DNA of 64,000 nucleotides from contig NC_135250.1 of assembly GCF_964204865.1 (NCBI RefSeq), positions 27,404,001-27,468,000 on the forward strand, read 5' to 3'. Source of the stretch: Styela clava. Its lineage: Eukaryota. Shown here one piece after another: positions 7,454 through 39,497 of this stretch. The notes beneath the pieces are model-generated. The model was not told the DNA's origin. It made no database searches and was given only the letters and a program-made list of their open reading frames with translations. How positions within the stretch are numbered: position 1 is the stretch's first letter; every line of letters starts with the position of its first letter. Position numbers and translations under genes: made by a program.

Positions 7454-8367
7454 ATGAGTACATTGGCTAGAAATGCAAAAGTGGACTTGGAAAAATTTAA
7501 TATAATCTCAATATGTGACCAAGGAAATGAAACAGATATGGAAGACGCAGCTTGGAAAATTTTCAGTGGAGTAAAAGATGCGTCAACTTTGGAAAGGCGG
7601 TCATATCGAGAGAGAATGAAAATTATCGCAACATCTCCAGAAAGTCGGTCACAAAAATACGCAGTCAGTGAGCTTAAATCTCATATTTCAAAAACATCTT
7701 CCGTGGGAAGTCGTATTTCGACAATGATTTTTGCTTACAAGGGTGGAACTCAAATTGTTGAAGAAGCGTTCACTTTTCAATCACTATCAGGAACTTTACT
7801 AGATGAAGGGGAGCAAGAACGGCATATCAGCAAACGCATTCAGCAAATACGTGAATCTACGGTGATCGTCGCGATTGAGGGAAAGAACAACTTACCGGAT
7901 GATTTGGCAAAGGTCTGTGTATAATAATAATATTCTATTGCTAAATACGCTCACAAACTGAAGTGAAAACCAAAAGTTTTCGATTGTTAATGTTGTATGT
8001 TCTTCATTGCGACAAATTAGTAGTACCATGTTTTAAATAGCTAGAATTAATCAACTAGGAAATTTGTTTAAATCACGGTTGTTGAATATGTTTTCGCAAT
8101 GTGATATTTTTTATTCAGATTTCTGTAAATTTGAGAGAGCGTTCAGACGTAGAAGGGTCAGTAGAAGAGCAGACAATAATCGGACCCACCGGGAAAAGCG
8201 CTCATGAGGTCAACTTCAATTTTAACCAAAAAAAAAACCTGAAAAGAAGTTTACTAAATTCTTTGGCAAGTTCTAGCGCGGCCTCATTGAATATAGTTGA
8301 GTTTTTAATCGATACTGGAGCGCTAAAATTTATATTATCTATTCTTGGCATTACATTATCAATTTAA
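7454..8367 (+). CDS. Lipase-like alpha/beta-hydrolase pseudoenzyme 'A' (copy 1), ~235 aa, hydrophobic C-terminal tail
   Basis: Exons 7454-7912 (ends DLAK|GT) and 8119-8367 (cag|ISVNLR). Shares EDAAWxI, IFA-xxxG and AK^IxxNxR..D motifs and the intron position with B and C; AYKGG replaces AHSHG. Confidence 0.85.
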
Positions 8368-9189
8368 AATTATTGATCATGTGGAATATCATCATAAATT
8401 TATATTTCAATTGTATTGAACTAAATTAAATTAATTTATTCGTAGATTTATTGCTCAACACAGATTACTGATATTTTGTTTATAAAAAGCGAGTAGAATA
8501 AAAACAACTACATACTAAGCTAAAATTTAGAACTTTGTTGCCTAAAAACTTGGATTTTATGTGCGGTGCTTTTATTTGGCTAGTATATATTGTTAATAAT
8601 TATATTGGAATATAAAATATTGTTAAAATTTTGTCTTTGTTCATCTTTGATCGTCAAGAAATATGTATTAAAAAACGATACATTCATAAACAAGGAAAAA
8701 AAGATTTTTGTTTGGAGGAGTGACTCTGAGCAACATATGAGGTTTTTGAAAGGAAACAATATCCTGGCCATCTAAAAATGTCCAAATATATAAAATAATC
8801 TTTATCAATTTTTTTTTGGGGGGAGGGGGGAAAAATGCAAGATTATCGGCAAAGGCATAAAGCCCTACACCGTGAGAAAATATGAAACGCTAAGAAAAAA
8901 TTGAATTTGTCGGATTTCCAAACTTTAATGAAATGCCTCGTCGTGTATCCGTGATTTGTTCGGTAAAGTTTTGCATTTTGTGAGGAAATTCTTTTAAAAA
9001 CTAGTCTCATTTCCACTAGTAGAAGTATTAGCCAAAATAGAAAATAGAACCACTGCATGTTGCAATCAACATTAAATTACAAAACATTCACCTAATAAAA
9101 TGATAATTTATTTCATAAAAGTAATCACAAATTGAACTCATACATTTTGAGAGCAGTTTATTTATGTACATTACAAAGCATAGACAAAA

Positions 9190-9870
9190 ACTTTTATTCA
9201 CAAATACCTACAGATCAAACCACAATCCTTTGGCATCGCCTAAAGTGAATTGACCTGATACAAAAGAATTGCTTAGACAATAACAAACGCGAAAGGGATA
9301 TGTTTCCTAATCATAGATTCTTCTCATATATCCAAGAATACATCTCATACGTGTAAGCCATTTTGTTTGTCATTCATATTAATTGCTCATAATAATTCTT
9401 TTACCATGTATAAATATATATATATATATCTTAAAAGAGTTATTACGCAACTCGATATTAGCATTTAGGTGAATTAAACTCACTTTGGACTGAGTTCAGT
9501 AGTAATATCTGACATTAAAAAACTCAAAAATTGTATGTAGTTCTGAATGCCATCAGAAATAAAGTAAAACTACAAAAAAAATGTTAAACTCATAAATTCT
9601 ATTATTTATTAGCGTGAAAAAATACAAGGTACCAAAATAATGCATTGGAATCACCAACTTGAGAATTTTAGACGCTATGACAAAACTGAATCAGTCTGAT
9701 CATTCCTAACTTTAGGGAAGTGCTTTTTTGTGTTTCTGTAATTTGTTCTGCTAAGTCTTGTTCAGCGTGGAAGAATTATATATGAAACAAACTATTTGTA
9801 ATACATCCAGTATATGTAGAATTCAAAAAGTAAAAAACTGTTTTACGTTTGTAATCCACATTTAATTATA
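9190..9870. repeat. ~650-bp local duplication, copy 1 (pairs with ~11050-11700)
   Basis: Shared strings cacaaatacctacaga, caataacaaacgcgaa, atctcatacgtgtaagcc, tgacaaaactgaat, aagtcttgttcag, aagtaaaaaactgttttac in the same order. Confidence 0.8.
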
Positions 9871-10454
9871 AAATATTCTCCTTATGAATTGTTTAATTTA
9901 TTTTAAAATAAAGAATTAAAAATAAATTGGTATCTTATACTTTGGAAACAAATCACATCTGGAATATTTTATAAACAAACTACATATACATTTGGACAAT
10001 GAAATAATTTCAGCATCTTGTGTTATGTGCCGCCCAGACTTCTTCAAGAAATCAAATCTCATACTTTAAGTATGATGTCAAGTCAAAATATTTTATTAAC
10101 AGCTATTTACAAAACACCCCGAAATCTTTTTCACAGCGTAAAATGGTCAAATACATAAAATTGCCAAGATATTGAATATAAATCGTGAAAGAATATGCTT
10201 TCGTAGCTATTCCTCGTTCATTGGCACATACACGCAAGTATTTAAATTCTTTTTTAGTATTTTTTCGTTTTTTATAATAACTGATTTGGTCCAAATGTAT
10301 TTTCACAAATATGTAATGAATAATTTCGTTCAACTCAATATTAGCATGTAGATGAAGAAACTCACTGCAGACTAAGCTCATTAGTAATATTGGACTTGTC
10401 AAAAACCCAAAAGGTGTGTGTAGTCAACAATGACCTAAAAGATTGAATTTCATT

Positions 10455-10660
10455 ATTGAACACGTAGTGGACATAGTAATTGTTTTGTTGTTATGTTGTT
10501 CTTAGTCTTGTTGTTGTTGTTGTTGTTCTTTGACACGTTTTGAAGAAATGGCTTTTCTCTTCGATGACTGAGAAATTTTCAGTGGTTAAAGATAGAATTT
10601 TTCTCCAGAAGGCTATTACTTTTTTTCTCTATGACGTCATCAAATCACGTGGCTCAACGT
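10455..10660. repeat. Dispersed repeat containing (GTT)n; other copies ~23270-23500 and ~56540-56745 (reverse)
   Basis: tgaacacg.agtggacata...gttgttgtt...gaaattttcagtggtt.aagat recurs. Confidence 0.6.
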
Positions 10661-11049
10661 GTCCATGTATTTGAGCGTAGCTCTCTTGTATTTATAACGT
10701 ATAATACGAACTGGAGAAACTGTAAGATTTTCTGCACCAGCATTAGGCACACCACCTTTGAAAATTGCGTGCAAGATACGCTGTATTAGTCTATTCCTCC
10801 CAAACTTTAAGTTCTAAATCAATCATTTGTTTGATTAGAACATATATTTTGTGTGCGGAAGTATTTTTTTTTTGCAGAACCTATATAATTAGTTCGAGAC
10901 GCTTTATGCGCCATAATATTGAGCTCTTGTGATTTGTCGCGGCAAATAAAGCCAACATGTTTAACGAAAATTTCAAATATAAAAACCATGTATTTCATGT
11001 TGTGATCAACGGTTATTTTTGTACGCTACTAAGCATAGTCATCATCTTT

Positions 11050-11700
11050 CACTCACAAATACCTACAGAACGAACCACAATCCTTTGTCATCGCGTAAAG
11101 GGAGTAGACCTAATTCAAAAGAATTGCCTAGACTAAACAATAACAAACGCGAACGTGATAAGTTTCCTTTTCAACGATTCGGCGCATATTCCCAAGAATC
11201 TATCTCATACGTGTAAGCCTTTTTGTTTTCTATTCATATTAATTGCTTCGTTCCCATTTTTGCATCTAGAATTATTTTACCATGTAACATAACCCACTTA
11301 TGAATATATATATATTCAAAGAGTTATTACTTAACTCAATATAAATATTTAGGTGAACAAAACTCACTCTGGACTGATATCAGCAGTAATGTATGACATG
11401 TCGAAAACTTGAAATATTTAGACAGTCTTATATGCCTACGAAAAATGTCAAATACATGAATTTGTCAAGTACATTACATGAAAGGTTTCAAACTAACGCA
11501 GAAAGCTTGCCACCTCGGAGAAAATTTAGCCCGCTCTGACAAAACTGAATTAATCTGATCTTTTCAAATTTCAGAAAAGTTCTCCTTCGTGTTTTCGTGA
11601 TTTGTTCTGCAAAGTCTTGTTCAGTGTGGAAGAATTAAATATCTCCTGTATATGTAGAATTCGGAAAAGTAAAAAACTGTTTTACATTTATGTTCAACAT
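11050..11700. repeat. ~650-bp local duplication, copy 2
   Basis: Collinear with 9190-9870. Confidence 0.8.
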
Positions 11701-12282
11701 TTATTAACAATAAAGTAAAAGTGGAACACTAATTAAAAATTTCATTAAATTCAAGTATAGACCGGACTGAGGCACTTTGGTTCAAATTACACTCCTAGAG
11801 TTAGGTACAATTCGGGAACCAAAAAATTAACCATAGTTCCTATTTTCCATTTTTTTCAAGTTCATATTCAAATTACGAAATAATTGATTTATTTGATAAA
11901 TCTTCCTGAATATTCTACTGCTTATGCCATGGACACTGAATCAATCATGTTTATTATTTTGAACCAAACAAGTGTTTTTGGCTACTGTGATCTTAAACCA
12001 AATTTTGTTTTCATACCAATTTAGAGACGTTTTTATCATTGTTCGTAATTTTATATTCAATTGTGAATTTACGTTAAATTCTTTTTTGCGCCCAAGTATG
12101 GAGCATAGGCTCTTTATCACTGTACTTTAAAACTTTATTTTAAACCAAATAAAACATTGGTAAGCTTATAGTCAAAAATTTAAGTTTCAATCACGTATGT
12201 CTGAGAAGAATTATTTGTCTTGATAATATTTTTTATGAGCAGGAAACCTGATTTTTGGTGGCAATCAGTTCGAATAATTTCT

Positions 12283-13414
12283 TCACGGCTTTTGTGAATA
12301 TATTGGATCACATATTTTGACCCATTCATCATTTTTGTGTTTTTTAATCCAGTGCATATTTTCGGGTTCGTTTTTTGTGGTCGTCTCTGTGCAACCACAC
12401 GGCACAGAATCGCCTTGCAGCCTCAACGTTTTCCAAATGAACCTCGTTATAGCACTATCGCTCGTATAATCAAACAGTAAATGTTTTGTTCCTTCAGTTG
12501 ATGCGGTTTTCAATGTTTTTAATTGAAAGAAGTTTTCAAGTCGGACCGATATTGACTCAGAAGAAGGTCTTGATTGGGACTCCACTTCTCCGTTATGAAA
12601 CTTTATTATTTCTGAGTTTTCACTGCTTCCTCCATACACCTTGTTGCCAAACTTAGATTTTACATCTTGTATAAATCTCAGGTTAAGACATATCTGCAAA
12701 GCAGGTCAATAAATATTTATTAAAAGTTGAATACATCGCAAACTAAATTATTGAACAGTTATTTTTTTGTTCATTTTAGAACAACTTGATTGACCGGATG
12801 CATCTAAGTGGTTCAACTACCTAAAAAAACAAAATGTTTTTGGATGAGTCAGCAAGAATTTGTTACTTCAATATTTTTGAATGTCAAAGATCATGTGCGC
12901 ATTTGTGTTTGAACATGGGAATATCGAAGAAACAAACCTTAGCATAGTCTTTTGGAATTGTGTCGATGCCACCAAAAGTGAAGACTGCTAAATTATCTTT
13001 AATTCGATTGAGTTTATTAGAAAAGTCCACTCCACTTTCATTCAGACGATGTTTGACAAAATAGTAATAAAGTGAATTTTCACCAATTGCCGTTCTAACA
13101 ATTTTAGCTCCATGACTGTGTGCAAAAATAATGCGAGTTATTCCATTTTTACAGTGAGGCATATGGAAAAGAATTTTGTGAATCTTTAACACAATTAACG
13201 TGGGTACTTCTGTCAAACTGCTTGCAGTGTCTACAATTGACTCAACGTCCCTGTAATGATTAATTCTTTTTCTTTCTGAAAAGTTGTGTAATTTTTTACA
13301 TATCTCCCACGCTGCATCTTCAACTTCATTGATATCGGCTCCAAAACCTCCAATTAAATATGCTTTGAATCCTTTCTGGCAAACTTCTATAACATTGTAA
13401 GTTTCATCAGCCAT
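12283..13414 (-). CDS. Lipase-like alpha/beta-hydrolase 'B' (copy 1), ~295 aa
   Basis: Exons 13414-12938 (LIGGFG, IIFAHSHGA, VFTFGG, KDYAK|GT) and 12693-12283 (cag|ICLNLRFIQD...KHLLFDY). Nucleophile-elbow Ser followed by candidate Asp and His in canonical order. Confidence 0.88.
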
Positions 13415-14379
13415 TCACCTCACGTATTTTAATGTCCTATCGTTGGGAATCAAATTAAATAAAACCTGTAACAATCAAACAAATAAAATTAAAGCAGAGC
13501 AAATTTTACATATCAAACATAAGTAATTTTTATCAAATATATTTTTACCTATTCACGATATATATATATATATTAAAATAAACGCAATACAACACAATAA
13601 AGTAGTGAATCTGAACATAATCAAAATACAAACGTTTCTAATTTTATACATATTTTATACAGAGCAGGACATATGGTCAACTGACGTTGAGGGCATAACA
13701 CAAATCCTGAATAATATAACTTGGCGTTAATCGTTTAATGCTGACGCTTGATAACGTTTGCATATTATATATTGTAAAGATATAAAATTTAAATTCATAA
13801 ATTCTAAAAACATGTACAAAATAAAATGGCAAAGTTTGTTAAAATGGTTTAATTACTAACGCTGAAGTTGGCATTGAAATTTTTTTTTAAATGTTGTACA
13901 GTATTAAATGTACTAAATAAAAAAAGTAAAATAAATAGCATTTGTTTGACATAATTGATATTATACTCAAATAAAAATATAAAATCCATATAAATAAATG
14001 ACAATACAGAACTGCGCTAATACAAATTTGCTTTTAAGACATTATTTCCACGTTCTGACAACTTGTTCCGACGAGTGGGCTCAGTCAGTTACGTGTGCAT
14101 GCTTACATGCTTTGTGGAATTTGCTGTTTCTTTCAATAATGAACAAATAAGTCAGTAAGTTACACAAACCCACTCAGGGTTTGCTGCTATTTTTAAAAAT
14201 AATTTCTGTTTTATCTTTTATTTAAAACAAGGATTAGTTTCAAATTCTAAAATATGAAGGCGAAGATAGTAAAAATTAAACGTTATAAAATTACAGTATT
14301 TAGAAATCACCCGTGGGTTTAGGTCAATCTTCAAACTTTTGAATTTGAAGATCTCCGTCTATTTTAATAAAATACTACA

Positions 14380-15202
14380 TTACATTTTAAGATAAACGTC
14401 TATTGTTTTGAGCACGTCTTCATTATTCACATACTCTCGCAAAACATGATTTGCTTTATCCCATGATGATTGACTTAAATCAGCAAAAACTGTCGAGGAA
14501 AAGTTTTTTTTTTCAGATTTTGTATCTTTACTTTTGGTCTTCGGAATTGTTTTCTTGTTGCACTTTGTCGCTCTCCCGACGAGCTTTTTTCCAAACGTTG
14601 CAATGGTATCATCCTCCAACCGAATATTTAAACAAGACTAATAAAAAAAATATGAATATGAATTAAATATGAAAAAATATGTTTTACACGGTCTCCTCTA
14701 TAACAATATAATGCTTCTTCTATCGTTTTACCTTAGCATAATCTTTAGGTATGTCTTGGATCCCCTCCAGCGAAAATATTGCTAATCGATCTCGGATCTG
14801 TTGAATTGCGTTCTCGATATTTTCTTCAGGTGTATTTTCCTTTATAAGAAACTTCCTTAAGGCCTCAGTTTTGCAAGCATCATATATGATCAGTGCACTG
14901 TGACTATGACCAAATAAAACATGAGTGATACCATTGCAGGTAAATTGTCTTTCATCCCATAACAATTTATGTATTTTTATGATGTCTGATTCTGAACATG
15001 CTTTCATTGACTTTGAGGCGTTTACAATCACACGAATATTTTCCTCGTGATTTTTCTTATTTCTATATGAAATATCATGCACGTACGAGTATATTGTCCA
15101 GCACGAATCTTTAAGTTTCGGTTCAATACCCGAATCTCCTTCTCCTCCATTATAACCCCCAACAAGTACAAACATTTGCCTTTTATCTATGCCGCTTGCC
15201 AT
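14380..15202 (-). CDS. Lipase-like alpha/beta-hydrolase 'C' (copy 1), ~242 aa
   Basis: ATG at 15202 (MASG, aligned with MAGS of copy 2). Exons 15202-14732 (LVGGYNG, LFGHSHSA, KDYAK|GT) and 14637-14380 (tag|SCLNIRLEDD...NHVLREY); 94-nt intron. Confidence 0.85.
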
Positions 15203-16700
15203 GAGTATTTTAAGTCCAAAAAATACTGCCAGTAATCGCTCCTGTTTTAAAAAGATCTTGAACACTCTTAGCTTGGTATCGTAAAAAGCGCTCGGTGTTC
15301 TGTATCCCCCTCGCGTGATCGCGCGCATTATGGCTGCCAATACCCTGCGAAAGTGAACCCTTTCAATGAATCGCTTGTAAACGAATGTAGGTTTGGATTG
15401 ATGGACAAAGAATTTCAATTATGTGATTATTTGAACCATTGGCATACTATTAAACCAAAGGCATACATTCGACATATTTACTATAAGAAGCGGAGGTTGT
15501 AAATTAAATACCGGTTTTAAATGCCATACTTCATGACCAGTCTTATCGCTGAAATAATCAATACAGGAATATTGTATTCTTTAAATCCAGTACAGTTGTT
15601 CTTAACACAATAGAGTGTATTTAACGGGTTTCTCAATAGTGTATCAAGCCTTCAACGCCCAGACAATAATATCAAGTTTCATCCGCCAACAAAAACAAGC
15701 CCTATAAATTAGGCTGTTGGTATATGCCACGATTTGGCCAAACAAGATATTTTAGAGTGAAGGTGTAATACTCAATCACGTACGAGTATATTGTCCTACA
15801 TGTATCTCTAGGTATTAGCTTTATATCCAACCATTCTTTGTAAAAATATTTGGCGTTTATTTATGCCGCTTGCCATGAGTCTCTTTAGACAAATAAGTAC
15901 TGCTAATCGCGCTTGTTTTAAAACTATTTCGAACACTCTTTGTTTGGTAACACAAAAATTTGCTGAGTGTACGCGTATATCGGGCTTTCTGGCTGCTTAT
16001 ACCTAACTAAAAAGGGCTTTCCAAATTAAGTGCAGCAATACAACTCTAACCTGGTACACATACTATATTCAGGAAGTGCGCCATCTTGGTGCACACACTT
16101 CTGGAGCTCCCTAAATAGCACCCTTTCCACGAATCGCTTGTAAATGAATGTAGGTTCGATTGATGGACAAAGAATTTCAATTACGTGATTATTTGCACAA
16201 AAACGTGCTGTTTTTGTTCGAGTACAATTGTTACTAATACAATCGAGTGTATTAGAAGGATTTCTCAGTGTATCAGGTTTCATTACGTTCGGACAGTACT
16301 ACTTATTCGGTTTATTCAAGCTTTATAAATTTTGCTGTGCGTATATGCCACGATGGACCTAACAAGATTTCTGGAGTGAAGGTGTAATACCGTACGAGAA
16401 TTTTGGGCAACATATAGCATCAGGACTTGGTTTCTTATGCGATCATTCTTTGCTCCTATTATAAGCCCCAACAAGTTAAAATTTTAGGTCGCTATCTATT
16501 CCACTTGCATTAGGTTTTCAGGCCAAATAGATAGGCTACTGCTCGTAATCCTTCTTGCTCCAAAAATTTCTCGAATACTCTTTACTTGTCAACATAATAA
16601 TGCACTGAGGACCCCCCCTCCCCTCCGCCAAAACTATATATTCTGTTTATTCAAGCCCTATAAATTCGGCTGTATGAATATGCAACGGCTGACTGATGAA
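15080..16700 (-). repeat. Tandem triplication of the gene C 5' end plus upstream region; two degenerate 5' fragments at ~15780-15960 and ~16390-16600
   Basis: cgtacgag...tatgccgcttgccatgagt...gaacactctt recurs at ~15083, ~15780 and (more decayed) ~16392; aatcgcttgtaaa.gaatgtaggtt.gattgatggacaaagaatttcaatta at ~15369 and ~16132. Confidence 0.75.
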
Positions 16701-17184
16701 AATGCTGTCAATACCATTTGCTTGGGAGAATCTATTAAAAAATATTCCAAATTGCTATTATAGTTTTGTGATTGACATCTTTTTTTTGTAGCCGCATTTA
16801 AATATTTATAAATTCAAATATGATTTTAGCAACCACGTTTGTTAAAATTGGTCACTTTTACAAATTTTGCGCCAATTGACTACGTCAACGGTAAAGATAT
16901 TTAAATACGTTTAAAACAAGATTTCCATTATTCATATAATAGGATTATTAACAAATCGTTAACATTATCCGATGTTTATGTAAACTGGCTTAAAGATTAT
17001 TAAATTATTCCTCATAGATTTAAATTAACTTTGTAAACTTATTTAAGTATATTAGTACAAACAAGACCGAGTTCAGTGAGTAACGTTAAAAATGTCCCAC
17101 AACATTAAATTCAATACTATAGAAATGTGTTTTGTCATTACATTACAATAATCATACATAATGGTACATTGGCAATGAGATACC

Positions 17185-17312
17185 CCTTTCAACACAGTAT
17201 TGATCATTCTCTCTACCGCCGTCTGGTTGTACAAAAAAACATGAAATAGTTCAAGGGTTTTCGATAGTTTCACTGGTCCAGACAAACTTGTTTTCTTGTT
17301 TCATATTGTTCC
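17185..17312 (-). pseudogene. C-type lectin pseudogene fragment (paralog of the last exon of 40082-41551)
   Basis: Minus frame reads QENKFVWTSETIENP*TISCFFVQPDGGRENDQYCV versus QENTFVWSNGTVANPRTIPWLFGQPDGGRENDQDCV; in-frame TGA; similarity stops at a MITE-like insertion at ~17318. Confidence 0.85.
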
Positions 17313-17317
17313 GACCA

Positions 17318-17621
17318 CCGTTTCTCAACCAGTGGGCCACGGTCCACTTCTGGGCCACAGATACATTTTCAGGTGGGCCACGAACCTATTAATAATTGCC
17401 ACAATTTTTGATAAATTTGTTAAACTTTGATTGAAATGAATGATACTGCCGCATTTTTGGCTGTGGGTGGTGATGCTCATTTTAATTATTTATTAACGTG
17501 TCTATTTTTTCAAAAATAGTTTCTTGTATTTTTTATTTTTTTCTTTGCATTAGAAAGTTGATGGACCTAATAAATTCTTGTGCACAAAAAGTGAACCAAG
17601 ACAGAATTGTGGATAACTATT
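17318..17621. mobile_element. Degenerate hAT-like MITE
   Basis: Begins caccgtttctcaaccagtgggccac with repeated gggccac subterminal motifs; right end and TSD are poorly preserved. Confidence 0.5.
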
Positions 17622-18175
17622 GGTCAAGAACAATTCACACTGAAAATTGCCCAGACTGAATTATTGTCACGAGTCGACTGCAATGTTATTACTATATTTT
17701 AGTAAGTTTTAAACAAATTATGAAAACTGAATCTCATTGTCGCAATCTGAGTCTACAATTATTTTAATCTTTATTTTTGTAATTGTATCTTGTTTTGTTT
17801 GAATAAGTTAGACAATAATTTGAAAAAACTTTAAAAAAAATATGCTCACTCTTTCGAGGAAACGGATCACTTTGTTCTCATTTATCACATTTATCTTGTT
17901 CAGATATCATAGTGGCAATGCCCACATACGGATTTGAAGTAAGAAGTAGATAAGGAGAAAGGACCTGCAGTTCAATATCCAACATCCTAATACGCAATCA
18001 TATGATCATAGTTATTTCATATCTTGCTTGGAGTTATGCATATGACAGTAAATATTAATCTTATAATTGTGAAAGGATACATTATAAGGTTATAGGTATT
18101 TCGTATTCACATATTCCAGTTCGAACCTTATATGGTTTCACCTTAAACAAATTTAATTCCAACATACAATTTAAG

Positions 18176-18283
18176 GTACTCCTGAAGTATGCGCACAAAG
18201 ATGTCGCATAACCTGAACCCTAACCTGGTACACAACCTGAATTCAGTTTGTGCGCCATCTTGCTGCGCATATTTCAGGAGGTC
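18176..18283. mobile_element. Short palindromic MITE family (gtactcctgaagtatgcgcac...gcgcatatttcaggag)
   Basis: Near-identical to 62432-62538; terminal inverted repeats around an aaccctaacctggtacaca core. Confidence 0.75.
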
Positions 18284-26881: not shown

Positions 26882-27743
26882 ATGAGTAAATTGGCTGGAA
26901 ATGCAGAAGTGGACTTGGAAAAATTTAATATAATCTCAATATGTGACCATGAATATGAAACAGATATGGAGGACGTAGCTTGGAAAATTTTCAGTGGAGT
27001 AAAAGACGCATCAAGGTCTGAAAGACGGAATTATCGTGATAGAATGAAATTTATTACAACATCTTCAGAATTTCAGTCCCAAGAAGACGCAGTCAGTGAG
27101 CTTAAATCTCTTATTTCAAACAATTCTTCTCTGGAAGGTCATATTTCGACAATGATTCTTGCCTACAAAGATGGAACTCAAATTGTTGAAGAAACCTTCA
27201 CGTTTCAACCATTATCAGACCTTCTACGTGAATCAATAATGATCGTGGCGATTGATGAAACTTCAAACTTATCGGATGATTTGGCCAAGGTTTGTATTTA
27301 TTTTTTTCCTATAAAATAAGAGTCGAGATTACAGCGAGAATCAAGTGTTTTGACAGTTTATTTTGTTTCTTCCTCATTGGGGTAAATTAAGAGCGCATGT
27401 CCCAACTATAGTAGAAAGTAACAAATATAAGTTTATGATATCTTTATTGGATTGGTGATTAATATTACCCATTATTATGCGTTGTTTTTCATAGATATCT
27501 GTAAATCTTCGGGCGCAGTCAGACATAACAAGAATGCAGGAAGAGTACAAAGTAATTGGAGACAGAGGAAAACAAGCTCTCGAAGTCAGCTTCGGTGTAA
27601 AAGAAGAAAAACCATGGACACATAACGTGCTATCTTCAATATCAAGTTCAAGCACCACTTCGTTAAACGTGATTTCCTTTATGCTTAAAACTGGAGCTTC
27701 AGCCTTTATATTATCTCTTCTAGGCATTAAACTGCCTATTTAA
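26882..27743 (+). CDS. Lipase-like pseudoenzyme 'A' (copy 2), ~218 aa
   Basis: Exons 26882-27289 and 27495-27743. AYKDG at the elbow position; in-frame 17-codon deletion relative to copy 1; same hydrophobic tail. Confidence 0.85.
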
Positions 27744-30686
27744 TTGAATACGCTTTGCGGTAACAAAATACCTTCCTTCAAAATACCACACTGTAGCTTT
27801 TAAAAAAAATAATTCTATTGTATCAAATAAAAACGAATAATACTAATATTTTACTTATTAAACTTATTTGTTTCTCTTTATAAGTGATTTACATGTGAAT
27901 AGTGTCATTTGTATGTGTTTGGTTAGAGAAAAATTATAATAAATTTCAATAATACATTTTGTCTAGATGTACATTGATCAACAGGTCAGAATTACATGCC
28001 AGGCTGAGTCTTTTCTTTCGAAATTATCAAACACTCTTTGCCATATTTGTGATTTATTTAGAGTCCTGTTGTTTGTAATTTTTACGAAGTTTGAAAAATA
28101 TTCTTTTTGATGTTGCTTTTAATATTTTCACAAATAATTCTTGTCATAAACATTTTGAATTTATTTTGAACAAATATCTACATATCTATAACGAATATAA
28201 ACAGTTTTTTAATCAAGGTGTAGTCAAAATTCTCGTTTAAACAGTCAGACCAAGAAACAATGAGGGCTTCGAGTGAGGAACTAGTGTGTAATGTCGCCTT
28301 GGTTTTGGAGTCAAAGCATAAATCAATTACGGCATATATTGGGCGCGTAGAGATAAAACGTTTTACAAAGTTCAAACATTAAAAACTAGTACTTGTGGCA
28401 ATCAAAATTCAATACAAAGAATTCTTCTCGTACATAATTTAATTTAGAAATAAACTGTTAATCTATAAAAACATGGCGTACCAGGAATTATCTTATCAAA
28501 AAACAAAACTTTAATACATTCAATAGGGAGCGTAGCCGAAATACCTTAATTACAAAACACTCTTTGCTATCGTGGTGCGAACGTGCTATCGTTTATCGTG
28601 GATTGGCATATAATTGTTTTAGCAATAAATGTAAACCGTAAAATTGTTTACTCAAAGCAACGTAATAATCTAATGTTCATACGGAAATCTATCTTTCGTA
28701 CGCCATTTTGTCTACCATATATGTACGCATATATCTAAATCTGCTTTACCTGTCGCTTCAATATAAATATTAAGGGAATTTTTTCATTGCATAATTTTAG
28801 AACGAGGTTGAACAAAACCTAATCAAAAGCTATTTGACTTGTTAAATATCGAGAATGCTGAAATTAGTTGGCCGAGTTAACCGCTTTATAAAATTATCTG
28901 TTTACATTTCATTATAATCGTCCACTGCTGTTGTCTAAGATAATAGTATATTAATTTGGATTATCCTAAAAATTCTCTGTAATTTTATATCGCGATCCAA
29001 TTAAAAATATCACTAAATGGCAAATGGTCAAAAAAAACGACCATACCTCGTAAAACTTACGAACTGTTAAAAATATAGAAATGCGCAATACTAAGTTTTT
29101 AGAGAGTTATCAACTTATTAGGATAAATGATTAGTACCAATGATTAGGGCTGGAGATGGTTAACCGGTTAACGAATTATTAAGTAAATATTTGAAAATCT
29201 GGAACTGCTGATTATGAATATTTGACAATTTTAGGTTCAGAATTAGTTCCGGTCATACGTTAGTAAAGTTTTGACAAACGCTTTGAATTTTTTTCAATAT
29301 TCATCGCCGAATTGAATACACACTCTGATGGTACACTGATAGCAGGTATACACACATATATATATATATAGGATCTTTTGTAAAAGCTTCGCCTTAAAAA
29401 CACCCCGTCGCCACTCAAAATTAAAAAAAAAATTGATTATCAGGTTAGGGTATGAAATATACATCACGCTGGAAGATAATATATCCAATCATTCCTAATA
29501 CGAACCTAAATCTTAACGGGATAATTGCGAATTGTTATATTGAAACGCGGCAAGCGTATTTTTTTCAAATCTCACATTTTTGCATTAGTGGCTTGGGCCT
29601 TCTAGAAAAGATTCCATATATAAATTTTAGACCATTCCTGCTAGATATTTAAATCTGGATATATAAATCTCTTTCACTGCTGCAGTCTCTAGTGGACCAG
29701 AACTGCGAAATTGTTCTAAAACCCGTGTGACTCATTAATAGTAAATTTTTACCATTTACGTCAAGCGTCACGCTGCGGTTAACAGGTCAAGTATTTTAAA
29801 CTGAAATTCGCAGCATAAACCAAAATGTGTGATACCAATTGTAGGACATCCAATATATGCAAATTCTTCCAGGAAAATTTAGTAAAATAAGTATCTTTGG
29901 AAAGTAGGGCAAACGCATAAAATTGCTTATCATTAAACTGAGGTAAATTAATTTATTATTATTATTATTTTGCACTCATCAAATTCATAAAGTTCACACT
30001 ATGTAGCGTTAGATATGCAAGATTCTAAAAGCAAACGTGACGACAGCAAGCTCAAAAAATCTTGGGTAGACTAGGTTAAAGCTGAATAAGTATTATTCTT
30101 CAGTGCGAAGTGTGTGGAGTCTTGTTGACCGTCAAACTGCTTTATTAATTTTTTTTTTACTTTTGCCCACAAATTCTTCCTCTGGAGTCTTAACATATTT
30201 TAATAGTAAAAAGAAATAGAACGATAACGTCTTGCAAAATCAACAAAACAAAAACCATTTCTTGCTATATTGAAAATTTAATACAAATAATTATTTCAAA
30301 ATGATGGATTAAAATAAATAGTCACAAAATGAACTACTGTATTTTACTACTGTACAAGGCTTAGCCAATTTTTTTTATCGCCTCATATATGATTGAACAA
30401 TCAGACCACCGTTTTTTGGCGAAACAAGCATAGTCAAAATCTTTTATCAAAAAATAAACACAAAACACAACGCAATCTTCTATCACTGCCTATAATATGG
30501 AACAGTAAATAATAAATTCAACATTCACGAAAAACCGTAAAATGAGTGACTCTGTGAAGGAATGAAACAATCAATGTATAAAAAACAAATTGTATAGTAT
30601 ACGAAATTTTGTTTGGTGTTTCTAGTAACAGTTCTGGCCGGAATTGTATATTCATCTAACTTTACTGTACCTTGTGCTTGATATAC

Positions 30687-31840
30687 CAGGGTGTGTAAAA
30701 TCCCTTTACAATTTTAATTTTGTTATTAAGTAAGTTGGCAATATCTCTCAACCAGGTTTGTTGAATTTTAGAATTTTAATCATTAGTTGTTCAAGAATAA
30801 TTACATCCTTTTACATCTGTGAGGACAAAAATATATCATATCAATAAATTCTTTCTGCAAATTTGAAAAAATCTAAGACTTTATGAATTTTTGATAAATA
30901 ACAATTTTTGCACCGCATAATTTCATTTCCAAGGTGAAAGAATTTCAATTCCATCGAAATCCAATAATTAATCTAGATATAAACAGTATGTAATTGTTGA
31001 GGGTTAAAATACTTGGTCAGATAATCTTTCCGTCGTATTAAAACGGCCACAAGTTATTTTTGAACGTTAACTACCTTTCAAAATAGTAATTCAATTCCCG
31101 ATGTAAATGAAAATATTTAAAAAAAAGTAGCTTCATGAAGTAATGCAAAACACTTCACAATGTTTCCCAACGAGTTGAATACAATTTAAAAATTTCTCAC
31201 AATAATTACATGTCCGCGTCAATATTAAAATTACTCGCAAATATTCCAAATAAACTCCTTTTTTTGCAAAAAGATGGCAAAGCAGAGAAAATTTTTTTTG
31301 TTTTCAAAATTTTGTTCCGTGTTGAATTCTCAGCAACACCAGGGTAATTCATGCAGAAATTCTTTAGGTTTTCATTACCCCATTAAAAATATGTCAAATT
31401 TAACGACGTGGAATGTGACCTTCAACACTTCGAGTGGGAGGTCAAAATAGTTCATTGAAAGATAATCACAAAACACACTGCAATCGTTTGTCTCCCCTTT
31501 AATTGTGGATAAACAAAGAATTGTTTCAACAATAAACAAAAACCGTGAAATGATAATGTTTCAAGAGCAATGATTAAATTAATGTAATGTAATGTAAATT
31601 GAATTTATAAAAATAAATCTGTCTTATTCCATGCACAAGTAAGTCTCATCTTCAGAATAGCGGTTTTGCCTCAGATCACATATCGAATCTGTCTAGCTTC
31701 GTAGCTTACTGAACAAATTTTGTTTGGGAAAATGAATACTCGAGGTGAAGAAAACTTCGAATTGGAACTGAGTTGTCAAAAAACTTGGTGTGTAATTATT
31801 AGGGTTGCCGGGCGAATGTCGAAACTTATAGGACACCCTG
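30687..31840 (-). mobile_element. Degenerate Tc1/mariner-type DNA transposon
   Basis: Ends cagggtgtg.../...ggacaccctg followed by TA. Minus strand ~31370-31445 resembles a decayed WPPxSPDL...DFFLWG transposase motif. Confidence 0.6.
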
Positions 31841-32040
31841 TATCAATCAGTTATTTTTCTGTTCATTTTAGAACAACTTGGTTGACCGGATGCAAGGACG
31901 GGTGCATCTAGGAGTTTTGAATAACTAACAACAAAAAAACATGTTTTTGGATGAGTCAGCTAGAATTTGTTACTCCAATATTTTTAAATGTCAAAGATCA
32001 TGTGCAAATTTCTGTTTAAAAATGAGAATATAGAACAAAC

Positions 32041-32517
32041 CTTAGCATATCCTTTTGGAATTGTGTCGATACCACCAAGAGTAAAAACTGCTAAATTGTC
32101 TTTAATTTGCTCGAGTTTTTTGGTAAAATCCACTCCATTTTCAGGTCGACAATATTTGATGAAATACTGATGAAGTGAGTTTTTCTCAAGTGCAGTTCTA
32201 ACAATTTTAGCTCCATGGCTGTGGGCAAAAATAATGCGTGTTATTCCATTTTTACAGTGGGGCATACAAAAGAGAATTTTTTGAATCTTGTAAACAATGG
32301 TTGTCGGTACTTCTGTTGAATTTTTTGCAGTGTCTACTATTGATTCAACGTCGCTGTAATGACCGATTCTCTTCCCTTCTGAAAAGTTGTATAACTGTTT
32401 GCATATCTCCCACGCTGCGACTTCTACTTCATTGATATCGGCTCCGATATCACCAACTAAATATGCTTTGAGTCCCGTCTGACAAACTTGCTTCACGTTG
32501 TCAGTTTCAACAGCCAA
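32041..32517 (-). pseudogene. Truncated extra copy of gene B exon 1 (B'')
   Basis: 159 open codons with AHSHG and GYAK|GT, but TTG instead of ATG with an in-frame stop just upstream; no exon 2 found beyond the intronic transposon. Confidence 0.75.
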
Positions 32518-33108
32518 GTTGGAGGCAAGTCAAAATTAGACAATGAAATATTTAAAAATGCAACAATTATTTTTAGGTCAATATTTCACAATTAGAAATC
32601 TTTATCAACATTTTAAATCACCGGTTCAGCAGTCATACCATGAAACAATTAAGACATGGTAATGCTTTTAGTTCAGAGATTTTATAAAAAATGAAAATTG
32701 CAAAATATTCCTTTAATTAGAAAATTAGTAGTAATTCAAAATTATATTAAAGTTTGAGTAGATTAAAGTTGAAATCGTTTTTCGAAATATATTTACTATT
32801 CCTAAGGAAATCTCATATCACCGCGTAATATATGAGATTATAAGAAATTCATTCAACAATAAACAAAAACCGTTAAATGAACTGTATATGGCCCTGTAAA
32901 GTACCGTAACAAGCGATGCACATATAGAAATCTAACTATCGTGCACACCATTTTGTATATATATATATATGTGTGTGTGTTCGTAATAGCCAATTCGGCA
33001 TGAATTCTAAACATAAATGAACTTGATGTGATTTTTTTTATATTGTTAAATACACCATTTACACTCATATAATTTAGAAACTGTAAAATTCAAATCCTAT
33101 TTCGCTCA

Positions 33109-34457
33109 TCAGAGATTCGTTTTGTAGAAGTATTTTGGGGCGCGAGCGTACGACCATGTAATATTGTGTCTTTTGATGTTCCATTCCTTATTTTCAAGTT
33201 TCTTCTTGGTAGTCGTCCCTGAGCATCCACATTGCACAGAATTGCTCTCCAACATTAAAGTTTGTAAAATTTTCCCCATTACAGCCGCGTCTTTTGTATA
33301 TTCAAATAGTACATGTTTTGTTCCTTCAGTGGATGCTCTTTTTAATGTTTTCAACCGACAGAAGTTTTTAAGTTGATCCAATTTTGACTCAGTTGTTGAA
33401 GATTCCACTTCGCCGTTGTGAAACTTTATTATTTCTGAGTTTTGGCTGCTTTCTCCATAAATAATGTTGCCAAACTCAGAATTTATATCTTGTTTAAGCC
33501 GCATGTTGAGACATATCTGCAAAGTAGATCAGAAACTATTTATTAAAAGTTGAATACATCGCAAACAACATTATACAAGGTGTCCAACAGGTATTACCCA
33601 ATTTTATAGTAATGACAATTGTAAGTTTTAATAAGTTTTGGTGTGTGATAAATGAGAACTATAACGTCCAACATGTGTAACATCAATTTCAATACGGATT
33701 GATTACAAATCATTTTACAATTAAAAAAAAATTCCTTTGATTATAAATACTTTACCATGGGCCGAAACTTATAGGACACCCTGTATTAATCAGTTATTTT
33801 TCTGTTCATTTTAGAATAACTTTGTTGACCGGATGCAAACACGGGTGCATCTAAGAGTTTTGAATAACTATTAAAATAACATGTTTTTAGATGAGTCAGC
33901 AAGAATTGGTTACTCGAATATTTTTGAATGTCAAAGATCATGTGCACATTTGTGTTTGAACATAGGAAAATCGAACAAACCTTAGCATATTCTTTTGGAA
34001 TTGTGTCGATGCCACCAAGAGTAAAAACTGCTAAATTGTCTTTAATTTGCTTGAGTTTTTTAGAAAAGTCCACTCCATTTGCATTTTGACGAGATTCAAT
34101 GAAATAATCAAGAAGTGACTTTTCATCAAGTGCCTTTCTAACAATTTTAGCTCCATGGCTGTGGGCAAAAATAATACGAGTTATTCCATCATTACAGTGT
34201 GGCATATGGAAGAGAATTTTGTGAATCTCGGAAACAATGGTTTTCGGTTTGTCTGACAAACTTCTTGCAGTGTTCACAATTGACTCAACGTCCCTGTAAT
34301 GAATAATTCTCTTTCTTTCTGAAAAGTTGTATAACTGTTTGCATATCTCCCACGCTCCAGCTTCCACTTCATTGATATCGGCTCCGAAACCTCCAATTAA
34401 ATAAGCTTCAAATCCTTTCTGACAAACTTGTTTTACATTGTTAATTTCATCAACCAT
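33109..34457 (-). CDS. Lipase-like alpha/beta-hydrolase 'B' (copy 2), ~294 aa
   Basis: Exons 34457-33981 and 33516-33109; AHSHG, CLNMRLKQD, KHVLFEY. Confidence 0.88.
33576..33783. mobile_element. Tc1/mariner-type MITE in the intron of B copy 2
   Basis: TA-caaggtgtcc...ggacaccctg-TA; absent from the homologous intron of B copy 1. Confidence 0.75.
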
Positions 34458-35287
34458 TTTTATTGTATAATTTAAAATCCTATAATTATTTAGTACATCT
34501 CAGATTAAATAAAATCTTTTAAAATCAGACAAAGAAAAATTAGGCAAATACAAAGTCAGATTACAAATTGAATGAGTTCAAATTTATTTTTAATTCAAAT
34601 ATCATAATACCTCTTTACGATATATAGAGTAATAAGAAAGACAAGGCATTTGAATCAGGGTCTTACTTCAAATAATATTTTAATAGTATATTTGGAAATT
34701 CTCCAATTTCATTTTAATCAAATTCAGTGAACTTTCGGCAGAAAACGATATTTACAACTACTAGACAATAATAAGGTACAATAATAATAATATGACGCAT
34801 TCGAAATTCAAACGGTTTTGCAAGTGACCGATACTAAGTATTGTGTCGCAAACAACGTTCCCTCTAAGAGCTTGGTAAGTTGCGCGGAATAGAAGGCCAT
34901 GGAAGCTCCAAAAAAAAGTCTGCACGGAAAATTAGAGCTTGTATTTAGCTTATCTTGTTGTCAATACTCATGCACTTTTTCAAAAAGCATAAAAAATGAA
35001 ATGCAATAATTATCAATATAAATGTAAATTGGAAAAACTGAATAGACTGTATATCAAAATATCAAAAAAATCACACAGATATGAGTAGGTTTCACTGATT
35101 ATTCTGGAAATCATTTTATTTTATTTTAATATTGTAGCAAAAGAATTTGATTAATTCCATTGATATAGTTTTCTCAATGTGTTGATATGAAAAGATCAAA
35201 ATTATGCAATGTAATACCTCAGAATACCAATAATTTATGTCGATATTTCATAATGAGAAAAGTTATTCTTTAAAATAAACTTTAATT

Positions 35288-36429
35288 TCATTTAAGATAT
35301 GCATCTATAGTTTCGAGCACTTTCTCGTGATTTACATACTTTCGTAAAATATGATTTTCTTTACTGCACGATGCAGAACAGGACAGATTTGACAAAAACA
35401 TTTGTTTCTGTGACTGTACAAATTGTTCAGGTTGTGGTTTTGATATGATTGTCTTGTTGCTGTCTGCATATTTCCCAAAAAGCGTTTTGACTGATTTTGC
35501 AATACCATCATTATCAAATTCAATATTCCAACACACCTGTTAAAAATTATATGTTAATCATTATATATAAATGTGAAATTGTATTTAGAAATAACTAAAA
35601 AGCTGTTTAATTATTTTATACATTATTTGAATAACAAGAGTTCAGTTTAGCGATTCCTAATTTAAAAATCTTCAATTCATATTTAATATTTCCTAATCAT
35701 GGCTATAGCCGTTGGTTTTGGAACTGCTTTTTTAAATACCCAATTTAATTTTAAAAGATAATCAGAATTTACTGTTTGATTTATCGTGTTCTGCATAATA
35801 TTAATTTAATTTAGTTCAAAATGAAGCTGTTTTGGATGAGATAAGATGCGCGCAATTCAACAGCATAGATTGAAATTGTTAATTACCACACGATATCAAA
35901 TATATCTTTCAATGAAATGTAGCAGTTGTAATTTGTAATATACTTTATTTGACTGCGATACCTTTGCGTAATCCCCAGGTATGTCTTGGATTCCTCCCAG
36001 GCTAAATATTGCGAGTCGACTTCGAATCGTTTTAATTATGATCGGTATTTCTCTTTCTGGTGTACGTTTCTTTATAAGAAAGTTCCACAGGGCCTCATCT
36101 TTAAGAGCTTCATATATGACTAGTGCGCCGTGGCTATGACCAAGCAAAACATGAGTTATACCATCAAAAGATTCATCATTGTATAACATTTCATGCAATG
36201 CCGTGATGTCTGCTTCTGAATTAGCTTTGAGATATGAACTTGAGTCGTTAACAATTACGCAGATATTTGGCATGTGATTGGCTCTACTCCTAGTGCTAAT
36301 ATCATAAACATACGAGTATATAGTCCAACATGCATCCTCAAGGAATAATTTTCTTTCCGGTATTTTTTCGCCCCCATTGTAGCCACCAACTAGTAAAAAT
36401 TTTGGCTTCCTAGCTACGCTGCCCGCCAT
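35288..36429 (-). CDS. Lipase-like alpha/beta-hydrolase 'C' (copy 2), ~238 aa
   Basis: Exons 36429-35962 (LVGGYNG, LLGHSHGA, FSLGG, GDYAK|GT) and 35536-35288 (VCWNIEFDND...NHILRKY). Confidence 0.88.
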
Positions 36430-39023: not shown

Positions 39024-39497
39024 CAGGGTGGTCCAAACCCAGGCCCGCGGGCCACATGTGGCCCGCCGCCTCTTTATCTGTGGCCCGCGTCACATTCGGA
39101 GTGTAACAAAAAAATCGCATTTCGTGTTGTTTCGTTATAAAATTAATCAGAAAAATTTCTTGACATATTGCTATCACTAATGTCACTGAATTAAATAGTG
39201 TTACGGCTAGCTGAGGAAATTAGAGAAGTTGAATGATGTGCTTGGCAGTCTAAATTGTTATCTGGCTTTCTAACTTCTTTGTCGGGAATATATGCAAATA
39301 ATATAGGCAACATAGAACACTAAAAACAAATGCGGATTCTATTAGCCTAGAATGGCTATGCCTGATAACTAAGTGTTTGCACAATGAAGGTTTTGTTTTG
39401 TATTGCACTGTTTACCTATTCCTGGCACTATTGTGGCCCGCGAACAATGCAAAAATAATTTTGTGGCCCGTGGAGCCGACAACCTCGGACCACCCTA
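39024..39497. mobile_element. hAT-type MITE, same family as 19576-20056
   Basis: TIR cagggtggtcc; perfect 8-bp TSD atttaagt. Confidence 0.9.

What the first reader, a model, noticed from the sequence alone, without database searches (positions are those of the whole stretch)
7454..36429. Co-inherited trio of lipase-like alpha/beta-hydrolases (pseudoenzyme A plus enzymes B and C), duplicated as a unit inside an innate-immune gene cluster
Seen: three very divergent ~220-295 aa paralogs are arranged A(+) B(-) C(-), and this arrangement occurs twice (7454-15202; 26882-36429). All share one phase-0 coding intron at (D/E)(L/Y)AK^, a (D/A)xxWxI helix motif and a post-intron xxNxx..D motif. B and C have GG(F/Y) near the N-terminus, [AG]-H-S-H-[GS], F(T/S)xGG, a candidate Asp and a C-terminal H-x-L-x-x-Y. 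None has a signal peptide. Established: Ser(elbow)-Asp-His in this order is the alpha/beta-hydrolase triad. Active-plus-inactive lipase-like partners are known in immunity from plant EDS1/PAD4/SAG101. Inference: an undescribed intracellular lipase-like module in which cytosolic B/C pair with a membrane-tethered dead partner A. A defence role is suggested by its neighbours (intelectin-like receptor, C-type lectin, Ly6) and by birth-and-death evolution. I do not recognise it as any named animal lipase family.
Basis: partly seen in the sequence, partly recalled or inferred. Interest (0 to 1): 0.9.

Follow-up and report, generated by a model that had tools for sequence, protein, structure and literature searches.

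The report
Sea-squirt-specific minimal hydrolase gene family, duplicated
The sea squirt Styela clava carries a small, unnamed family of stripped-down serine-hydrolase-like genes (two types with an intact catalytic triad, one dead type) that was copied once inside an 18 kb block together with lectin and Ly6-like genes; the genes and the fold hold up, but I found no evidence for the proposed immune enzyme/pseudoenzyme partnership.

Summary
The window (Styela clava, chromosome-scale contig C1) holds six complete two-exon genes: A1, B1, C1 and A2, B2b, C2. It also holds one exon-1-only fragment, B2a. All share a phase-0 GT..AG intron after the ...AK motif, and all match RefSeq "uncharacterized protein" models.

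An AlphaFold2 model of B1's allele (pLDDT 78) is an alpha/beta hydrolase. All 50 best chains of an unbiased scan of 48,161 PDB chains are alpha/beta hydrolases. The best are Lip_vut1 and Bacillus LipA, at Z 12 with about 160 of about 175 residues aligned.

B and C keep Ser (elbow), Asp (after strand 7) and His. A lacks Ser, His and the GG turn, yet its dN/dS is 0.5 (interval 0.35-0.74).

No Pfam, NCBIfam or PDB sequence match reaches threshold. Only about 17 real relatives exist among 1.84 billion proteins. They are Styela clava proteins plus unnamed short contigs.

- The duplicated unit is about 18 kb, not the trio. It also carries a C-type lectin and a Ly6-like gene.
- The family has at least 14 copies in the genome.
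- A D-type cluster on C3 has no dead partner.
- Two dead domains are fused to IRE1-like kinases.

The immune role and A-B/C pairing remain untested. This scan had noted paralog A on this same window only.

The parts
7454..7912 (+). A1 exon 1. Dead paralog: AYKGG replaces the Ser elbow and there is no GG turn.
   Evidence: ORF and GT donor; equals RefSeq P0023 residues 1-153; alignment.
8119..8367 (+). A1 exon 2. It keeps the post-intron Asp, has no His, and ends in a hydrophobic C-terminus.
   Evidence: AG acceptor; P0023 residues 154-235; KD 1.79.
12938..13414 (-). B1 exon 1, with GGF, AHSHG and FTFGG.
   Evidence: equals P0020 residues 1-159.
12283..12693 (-). B1 exon 2, with Asp after strand 7, His in HLLFDY, and a disordered tail carrying a CGC motif.
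   Evidence: AF2 model of the allele P0002.
14732..15202 (-). C1 exon 1, with GGY, GHSHS and FSLEG.
   Evidence: RefSeq model P0003 starts further upstream, at 15328; that extension overlaps a dispersed repeat and is doubtful.
14380..14637 (-). C1 exon 2, with Asp and His in HVLREY.
26882..27289 (+). A2 exon 1. Dead paralog (AYKDG) with a 19-codon in-frame deletion relative to A1.
   Evidence: model equals RefSeq P0032.
27495..27743 (+). A2 exon 2.
   Evidence: AG acceptor and translation; HMM hit.
32041..32514 (-). B2a, an exon-1-only partial duplicate of B. It has no ATG (a Leu codon stands at the start), reads GDI instead of GGF, and has no family exon 2 downstream.
   Evidence: RefSeq P0001 splices part of it onto B2b as a chimeric model.
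33981..34457 (-). B2b exon 1.
33109..33516 (-). B2b exon 2.
35962..36429 (-). C2 exon 1, with GGY, GHSHG and FSLGG.
   Evidence: equals RefSeq P0025.
35288..35536 (-). C2 exon 2, with FDNDG Asp and His in HILRKY.
7394..25254 (.). Copy 1 of the ~18 kb segmental duplication: A1, B1, C1, C-type-lectin exons at about 17187-17711, and a Ly6-like gene at 23018-23805.
   Evidence: blastn of the window against itself, 70-86% identity in collinear and inverted blocks; exons listed.
26824..45031 (.). Copy 2 of the segmental duplication: A2, B2a, B2b, C2, a C-type lectin at 40082-40327, and a Ly6-like gene at 43708-44268. The distal part is inverted relative to copy 1.

Best explanation
These genes belong to a taxonomically narrow, so far unnamed family of minimal (about 220-295 aa), lid-less alpha/beta-hydrolase-fold proteins of the ascidian Styela clava. 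Types B and C, and type D elsewhere in the genome, keep an oxyanion-turn GG, a Sm-x-Ser-x-Sm nucleophile elbow, an Asp after strand 7 and a His before the last helix. They have no signal peptide. I infer that they are cytosolic serine esterases, lipases or thioesterases working by the ordinary Ser-His-Asp acyl-enzyme mechanism on an unknown ester or thioester substrate. Type A is a non-catalytic paralog: Ser, His and GG are lost and Asp is kept. It is still kept as an intact gene under purifying selection. The twice-occurring A-B-C order results from one ~18 kb segmental duplication (dS about 0.5). That event also copied a C-type lectin and a Ly6-like gene. It was followed by inversion of the distal part and a partial extra duplication of B (B2a). 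Shown: the genes, the introns, the motifs, the predicted fold, the duplication and the selection. Inferred: catalysis, cytosolic location and any biological role.
For: Gene models and introns. Fold: the AF2 model of P0002 has pLDDT 78 and pTM 0.78. Foldseek puts Bacillus LipA and Lip_vut1 on top with probability 1.00. VIA gives Z 12.0-12.2 with 156-162 residues aligned of 179-180. In the Foldseek-independent scan of 48,161 chains, all 50 top rows are alpha/beta hydrolases, Z 12.1 down to 8.6. In the model, Ser100 sits between strand 94-99 and helix 101-110, Asp169 follows strand 160-166, and His230 precedes helix 232-249. Ser, Asp and His are conserved in B, C, D and most relatives from other species, two of which read Cys instead of Ser. 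Sub-threshold Pfam hits all fall in the alpha/beta-hydrolase clan: DUF900, DUF676, Cutinase, Abhydrolase_8. Atlas structure neighbours are DUF900, DUF687 and alpha/beta hydrolases at TM about 0.5. Selection: omega is 0.50 for A, 0.40 for B and 0.45 for C, and the bootstrap intervals exclude 1. Duplication: (dS is 0.50 for A, 0.49 for B and 0.83 for C, with overlapping intervals). Tree: A1+A2 99/99, B 100/100, C 91/95.
Against: No sequence-level match to any characterised hydrolase. The fold and the triad positions come from a prediction built on only 13 sequences. Model confidence between the putative strand 8 and the His is low (pLDDT 56-59 for residues 201-230). The triad geometry could not be measured because no coordinates were available. 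C1 has FSLEG and GHSHS, which may impair it. Several family members have lost the nucleophile (A, P0015, the kinase fusions), so catalysis is dispensable for at least some family functions. I could obtain no expression or activity data.
Confidence: 0.75

Rival explanations
1. A, B and C form an intracellular immune module in which active B/C pair physically with a membrane-tethered dead partner A, by analogy with plant EDS1/PAD4/SAG101.
For: A is a dead paralog under purifying selection, next to B and C, in both copies. Its C-terminal 19 residues score KD 1.7-1.8 in both A copies, against 1.2 or less anywhere in B or C. The neighbours are an intelectin-like gene, C-type lectins and Ly6-like genes. 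Dead domains of the family are also fused to IRE1/RNase L-like kinases, which suggests that the fold serves as an interaction or signalling module.
Against: The co-duplication is a single ~18 kb event that also took unrelated genes. The D-type cluster on C3 has no dead partner. No A ortholog turned up outside Styela clava. There is no Lipase_3 or EP domain. A's hydrophobic tail aligns with the family's normal last helix and LG(L/I) motif, and it contains Asp and Lys. No expression or interaction data exist.
Confidence: 0.1
2. The whole family, B and C included, acts mainly as non-catalytic binding or adaptor domains, for instance as partners or regulators of the IRE1-like kinase fusions. The retained triad would be vestigial or would bind a ligand without turnover.
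For: The nucleophile has been lost repeatedly: in A, in P0015, in P0006 (AHTGG) and in P0016 (AYGDG). The kinase + domain + SH3 architecture of P0016. Alpha/beta-hydrolase receptors such as GID1 appear among the fold hits.
Against: Ser, Asp and His are conserved in B, C and D copies and in most relatives from other species that share only 25-39% identity. That pattern is hard to explain without catalysis.
Confidence: 0.1
3. The family entered the ascidian lineage by horizontal transfer of a bacterial DUF900-like hydrolase and then expanded. This concerns origin and is compatible with the best explanation.
For: The Atlas language-model features are closest to bacterial hypothetical-protein clusters (0.96, 195 of 256 shared). 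The structural neighbours are bacterial DUF900 and DUF687 clusters. The family has a very narrow animal distribution. Ascidian HGT precedents exist (PMC6339383, seen in the listing but not read).
Against: No bacterial protein reached E 0.001 in a full HMMER scan of 1.84 billion representatives. All copies carry the same spliceosomal intron. Similarity at fold level is expected for any alpha/beta hydrolase.
Confidence: 0.05

Closest known systems
Bacillus subtilis lipase A and the rumen lipase Lip_vut1 (minimal alpha/beta hydrolases, Pfam Lipase_2)
   Same: Best structural matches, at Z 12 with nearly the whole 172-180-residue enzyme aligned. Both have a lid-less compact fold. The A-H-S-x-G elbow of type B resembles LipA's Ala-His-Ser-Met-Gly (the LipA motif is from my own knowledge).
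   Different: 13-16% identity. There is no Lipase_2 HMM match in the proteins or anywhere in the genome. The family has an extra helix after helix A and a roughly 40-residue insertion (hairpin plus helix) between strand 8 and the His. LipA is secreted, whereas these proteins have no signal peptide.
Cutinases, YdeN/FSH1-type serine hydrolases, acyl-protein thioesterases (APT2, SOBER1, bacterial carboxylesterases)
   Same: Fold matches at Z 10-11.4 over 150-162 residues. They are small, single-domain Ser-Asp-His enzymes. APT, SOBER1 and FSH1 are cytosolic.
   Different: No sequence-level relationship. Only one member gave a sub-threshold Cutinase hit, E 0.0085.
Pfam DUF900 / DUF676 (uncharacterised and putative serine esterases)
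   Same: These are the recurrent sub-threshold HMM hits: DUF900 in 3 of 13 members, best E 0.023, and DUF676 at E 0.007. They are also the nearest Atlas structure clusters.
   Different: All scores are below the gathering thresholds. DUF900 is mostly bacterial.
Plant EDS1/PAD4/SAG101 lipase-like immune heterodimers
   Same: Only the concept: an alpha/beta-hydrolase family in which some paralogs keep the triad and others lose it.
   Different: There is no Lipase_3 domain and no EP domain, and the proteins are about one third the size. Neither a heterodimer nor an immune role has been shown (one search gave no answer).
IRE1 / RNase L (kinase followed by an effector domain)
   Same: Two Styela clava genes, on C18 and C10 outside the window, encode a kinase domain whose best PDB match is IRE1 (E 4e-26, against 5e-20 for the next family). 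It is followed by a domain of this family.
   Different: The C-terminal domain is a Ser-less hydrolase-like domain, not a KEN RNase. P0016 adds an SH3-like C-terminus, which I read by eye and did not test. No lumenal or ankyrin sensor was identified.

Membership tests
Alpha/beta-hydrolase fold superfamily | Central parallel sheet with flanking helices in the canonical order | tested here: met
   AF2 model at pLDDT 78. All top-50 rows of an unbiased PDB scan are alpha/beta hydrolases, Z 12.1-8.6, covering model residues 12-253. This is a predicted structure, not an experimental one.
Alpha/beta-hydrolase fold superfamily | Nucleophile elbow Sm-x-Nu-x-Sm between strand 5 and helix C | tested here: met
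   AHSHG (B), GHSHG/GHSHS (C) and CHSNG (D), with Ser100 between strand 94-99 and helix 101-110. Not met in A (AYKGG/AYKDG).
Alpha/beta-hydrolase fold superfamily | Acid after strand 7 and His after strand 8, in the order Ser-Asp-His | tested here: met
   A conserved Asp follows strand 160-166, and a conserved His precedes the last helix, in B, C, D and relatives. A keeps the Asp and lacks the His.
Alpha/beta-hydrolase fold superfamily | Triad side chains within hydrogen-bonding distance; hydrolytic activity | not testable with these tools
   Model coordinates are not exposed, and no assay is possible.
Lipase_2 (Bacillus LipA family, PF01674) | Match to the family HMM above the gathering score | tested here: not met
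   No hit in any member. A six-frame search of the whole genome gave 0 matches, while the control genomes matched.
EDS1/PAD4/SAG101 | N-terminal class-3 lipase domain plus C-terminal EP domain | tested here: not met
   No Lipase_3 or EP-domain hit at E up to 10. The proteins end 20-60 residues after the hydrolase fold.
EDS1/PAD4/SAG101 | Exclusive heterodimers between paralogs | tested here: inconclusive
   The complex prediction for A1 with B1 gave no answer. It counts neither for nor against binding.
DUF900 (PF05990) / DUF676 (PF05057) | Match to the family HMM above the gathering score | tested here: not met
   Best E values are 0.023 and 0.0073; the DUF676 score is 16.3 bits against a cut-off of 20.3.

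The most novel reading that the evidence does not exclude
An ascidian-specific signalling system built on one hydrolase fold. Free active hydrolases (B, C, D) would make or destroy a small ester or lipid signal. Dead paralogs, both free (A, possibly tail-anchored) and fused to IRE1/RNase L-like kinases with an SH3 domain, would act as sensors or scaffolds for that signal or for the enzymes. The system would be deployed in innate immunity next to lectin receptors. It would be a functional analogue of plant EDS1/PAD4 or of the RNase L pathway, evolved independently in a chordate.
Probability: 0.08. Interest if true: 0.85.

Novelty: new member of a known kind. Interest (0 to 1): 0.42.

Why it matters
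The finding defines a protein family that no domain database covers and that RefSeq annotates only as "uncharacterized". It assigns the family a fold and a probable chemistry. It also shows that a chordate lineage has recently been making active, dead and kinase-fused versions of one minimal hydrolase. If the enzymes are active, they are among the smallest animal alpha/beta hydrolases and could be useful model enzymes. If the dead copies and the IRE1-like kinase fusions cooperate with them, this would be a new signalling arrangement. As it stands, this is an annotation-level advance. The immune story is a hypothesis that rests on gene neighbourhood only.

Tried and rejected
- **Exon-by-exon sequence searches.** Pfam, NCBIfam, PADLOC and PDB searches of single exons and of the RefSeq proteins gave nothing above threshold.
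- **Word-indexed homolog search.** With C2 exon 1 it found nothing. With the family alignment it found only 5 proteins.
- **Exon-1-only AF2 model.** Its fold search was inconclusive: Foldseek E at least 0.04 and VIA Z at most 7.2, with a mix of flavodoxin-like folds and cutinases. Only the full-length model resolved the fold.
- **Complex prediction on A1 with B1 (residues 1-255).** It returned "no answer" with score 0.00, and the partner itself was poorly folded. This is not evidence either way.
- **Expression evidence.** I have no RNA evidence of my own.
- **Source of the unnamed contigs.** The source organisms and the synteny of the unnamed Logan/ENA relatives could not be looked up.
- **False positives.** P0011 and P0018 from the HMM search are low-complexity repeat proteins.
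- **Literature.** A search for Styela clava with hydrolase and immune found nothing on this family.
- **Spliced sequences.** I handed no self-joined spliced sequence to any search or fold tool. Full-length steps used the database proteins P0002, P0020, P0023 and P0025. Exons were joined by coordinates only inside scripts, for dN/dS and hydropathy.
- **Rejected: A's tail as a newly gained anchor.** It aligns with the family-wide last helix.
- **Rejected: the trio as the unit of duplication**.

Full report
**What the sequence is.** The window is Styela clava (leathery sea squirt), contig C1:27,404,001-27,468,000 of a 377 Mb assembly. GC content is about 31%. The largest open frames in the window are almost all members of one family.

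**Observation.** A family HMM run over all six frames finds seven exon-1 units and six exon-2 units, and nothing else.

- In the order A(+), B(-), C(-), the first set is A1 7454-7912/8119-8367, B1 13414-12938/12693-12283 and C1 15202-14732/14637-14380.
- The second set is A2 26882-27289/27495-27743, B2b 34457-33981/33516-33109 and C2 36429-35962/35536-35288.
- Between A2 and B2b lies B2a (32514-32041), an exon-1-only copy without an ATG and without a family exon 2.
- Each exon 1 ends ...AK followed directly by GT.
- Each intron (94-464 nt) ends with a pyrimidine tract and AG, in phase 0.

The six complete models are identical to RefSeq "uncharacterized protein" entries: P0023 = A1, P0020 = B1, P0003 = C1, P0032 = A2 and P0025 = C2. 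P0001 is B2b chimerically spliced to B2a. The same intron position recurs in every other family copy in the genome, including the kinase fusions. The exceptions are C1, which reads FSLEG and GHSHS, and B2a, which reads GDI.

**What the proteins are.** Sequence methods give no named family. Pfam, NCBIfam, PADLOC and PDB-sequence searches of exons and of the full RefSeq proteins stay below threshold.

- The only recurrent sub-threshold hits are alpha/beta-hydrolase clan families: DUF900 in 3 of 13 members, plus DUF676, Cutinase and Abhydrolase_8.
- A full HMMER scan of 1.84 billion representative proteins with a B/C/D exon-1 profile returned 19 hits, two of which are repeat artefacts.
- The named hits are all Styela clava. 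The rest are unnamed short contigs from Logan and ENA.
- P0005 and P0009 share at most 36-39% identity with any Styela copy, so they come from other species.

**Fold.** An AlphaFold2 model of P0002 (a B1 allele), built on the 13-sequence family alignment, has pLDDT 78 and pTM 0.78.

- Foldseek ranks Bacillus subtilis lipase A and the rumen lipase Lip_vut1 first, with probability 1.00 and E about 1e-3.
- VIA-align gives Z 12.0-12.2 with 156-162 residues aligned out of 179-180.
- In the Foldseek-independent scan of 48,161 chains, all 50 best rows are alpha/beta hydrolases. They include Lip_vut1 at Z 12.1, LPLA2 at 11.5, YdeN at 11.4, cutinases at about 11, SOBER1 at 10.5, and also APT2, PPT2 and PGAP1.

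**Triad positions in the model.** Ser100 lies between strand 94-99 and helix 101-110. Asp169 lies just after strand 160-166. His230 lies just before the last helices, 232-249. This is the canonical Ser-Asp-His order. The three residues are conserved in B, C, D and most relatives, and two relatives have Cys in place of Ser. I could not measure triad geometry because no coordinates were available. Confidence is low between residue 201 and His230. An exon-1-only model was inconclusive.

**Paralog A.** A1 and A2 read AYKGG/AYKDG at the elbow. They lack the GG turn and the His, and they keep the Asp.

- Both are intact, and both are RefSeq models.
- A1 against A2 gives dN/dS 0.50 (bootstrap 0.35-0.74), similar to B (0.40) and C (0.45). 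A is therefore a maintained non-catalytic paralog.
- Its last 19 residues are hydrophobic (KD 1.79 and 1.68), against a maximum of 1.2 anywhere in B or C.
- That stretch aligns with the family's normal C-terminal helix and its LG(L/I) motif, and it contains Asp and Lys.
- I put the tail anchor at about 0.3.
It only partly agrees on the "gained" tail.

**The duplication.** Self-blastn shows that homology runs far beyond the trio. Overall, 7394-25254 corresponds to 26824-45031. The matching blocks are:

- A at 83% identity, B at 80% and C at 70%;
- C-type-lectin exons, 17187-17711 against 40160-40369;
- an inverted distal part, 19577-25254 against 39496-42061/45031, which holds a Ly6-like gene (23018-23805 against 43708-44268).

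Synonymous divergence is 0.50 for A, 0.49 for B and 0.83 for C, with overlapping intervals. This is compatible with one event. The tree groups A1+A2 (99/99), the three B copies (100/100) and C1+C2 (91/95). Relations between the types are unresolved. The trio was therefore copied once, as a passenger of a larger segment. That is not evidence for selection on the trio.

**The wider family.** The genome has at least 14 copies.

- C3 holds four intact D-type genes (HGxGG, CHSNG) at 18.49-18.72 Mb and one broken copy with an in-frame TGA. At least the two at 18.49 and 18.51 Mb lie beside fibrinogen-domain genes.
- None of these D-type genes has a dead neighbour in the 10 kb I fetched around it.
- Two genes, on C18 and C10, fuse a Ser-less domain (AHTGG, AYGDG) to a kinase. 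P0016 also ends in what looks like an SH3 domain (read by eye only).
- The best PDB relatives of that kinase are IRE1, at E 4e-26 against 5e-20 for the next family.
- No A-type ortholog was found outside Styela clava, within the limits of the word-based search.

**Context.** They are an intelectin-like gene (E 1e-7 to Intelectin-1, in line with note s1-810876), C-type lectins, and Ly6-like exons that score below the Pfam cut-off. Lectin genes are abundant in ascidian genomes (my own knowledge), so the association is weak evidence for function.

**Mechanism and odds.**

| Reading | Odds |
|---|---|
| B and C are cytosolic, lid-less Ser-His-Asp hydrolases of unknown substrate; A is a maintained dead paralog; one ~18 kb segmental duplication produced the pattern | 0.75 |
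| EDS1/PAD4-like pairing in immunity | 0.1 |
| Family-wide non-catalytic adaptor role | 0.1 |
| Bacterial origin (suggested only by Atlas feature similarity of 0.96 to bacterial hypothetical clusters) | 0.05 |

**Limits.**

- Complex prediction gave no answer.
- I handed no self-joined spliced sequence to any search or fold tool. Full-length work used the database proteins, and exons were joined only by coordinates inside scripts.

**Verdict.** This is a real, previously unnamed, lineage-restricted family of the alpha/beta-hydrolase kind. The anatomical observation is right, and the functional story is unproven. Interest 0.42.

Noticed in passing
G000:C18 about 4,650,800-4,653,300 (L005 4789-7310, minus strand) and G000:C10 about 8,100,700-8,101,900 (L006 6750-7852): Two Styela clava genes (P0006, P0016) fuse an IRE1/RNase L-like kinase domain to a Ser-less domain of this hydrolase-like family, placed where IRE1 has its KEN nuclease. 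The best PDB hits of the kinase are IRE1 at E 4e-26. P0016 ends in what looks like an SH3 domain (read by eye, not tested).
   Followed up: partly
L001 232-642 and 4350-5857; L002 5-394 and 4131-5648; L003; L004 (G000:C3 18.49-18.72 Mb): A second cluster holds D-type family genes (HGYGG, CHSNG) with three exons. Two of them sit about 4 kb downstream of fibrinogen C-terminal-domain genes (Pfam E 5e-23), inside a ~23 kb tandem duplication. One copy (L003 3451-3657) is broken by an in-frame TGA.
   Followed up: partly
window 31846-32217 and 33151-33516: RefSeq model P0001 (XP_039258466.2) joins B2b to part of the B2a fragment. An older version, P0026, also joins C2. These look like read-through or chimeric predictions across tandem paralogs.
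   Followed up: partly
window 16042-16110, 18175-18284, 41758-41821, 62318-62541: A short dispersed repeat (65-110 nt, 76-94% identity) occurs in both orientations. A related sequence lies in the frame just upstream of C1's ATG (15203-15418). This makes the N-terminal extension in RefSeq model P0003 doubtful.
   Followed up: no
window 12283-12420 (B1 tail) and 33109-33240 (B2b tail): B proteins carry a disordered C-terminal tail of about 45 residues with a conserved Cys-Gly-Cys. The unnamed relative P0005 shares it. It could be a lipidation or metal site. C and A lack it.
   Followed up: no
window 2882-3079 and 3410-3538 (minus strand): Exons of an intelectin-like gene, carrying a GGGWTLVAS motif (E 1e-7 to human Intelectin-1), lie just outside the duplicated segment.
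   Followed up: partly
protein P0008 (unnamed Logan contig, D-like relative): Unlike the Styela proteins, it begins with a hydrophobic, signal-peptide-like N-terminus. Some members of the family may therefore be secreted in other species.
   Followed up: no
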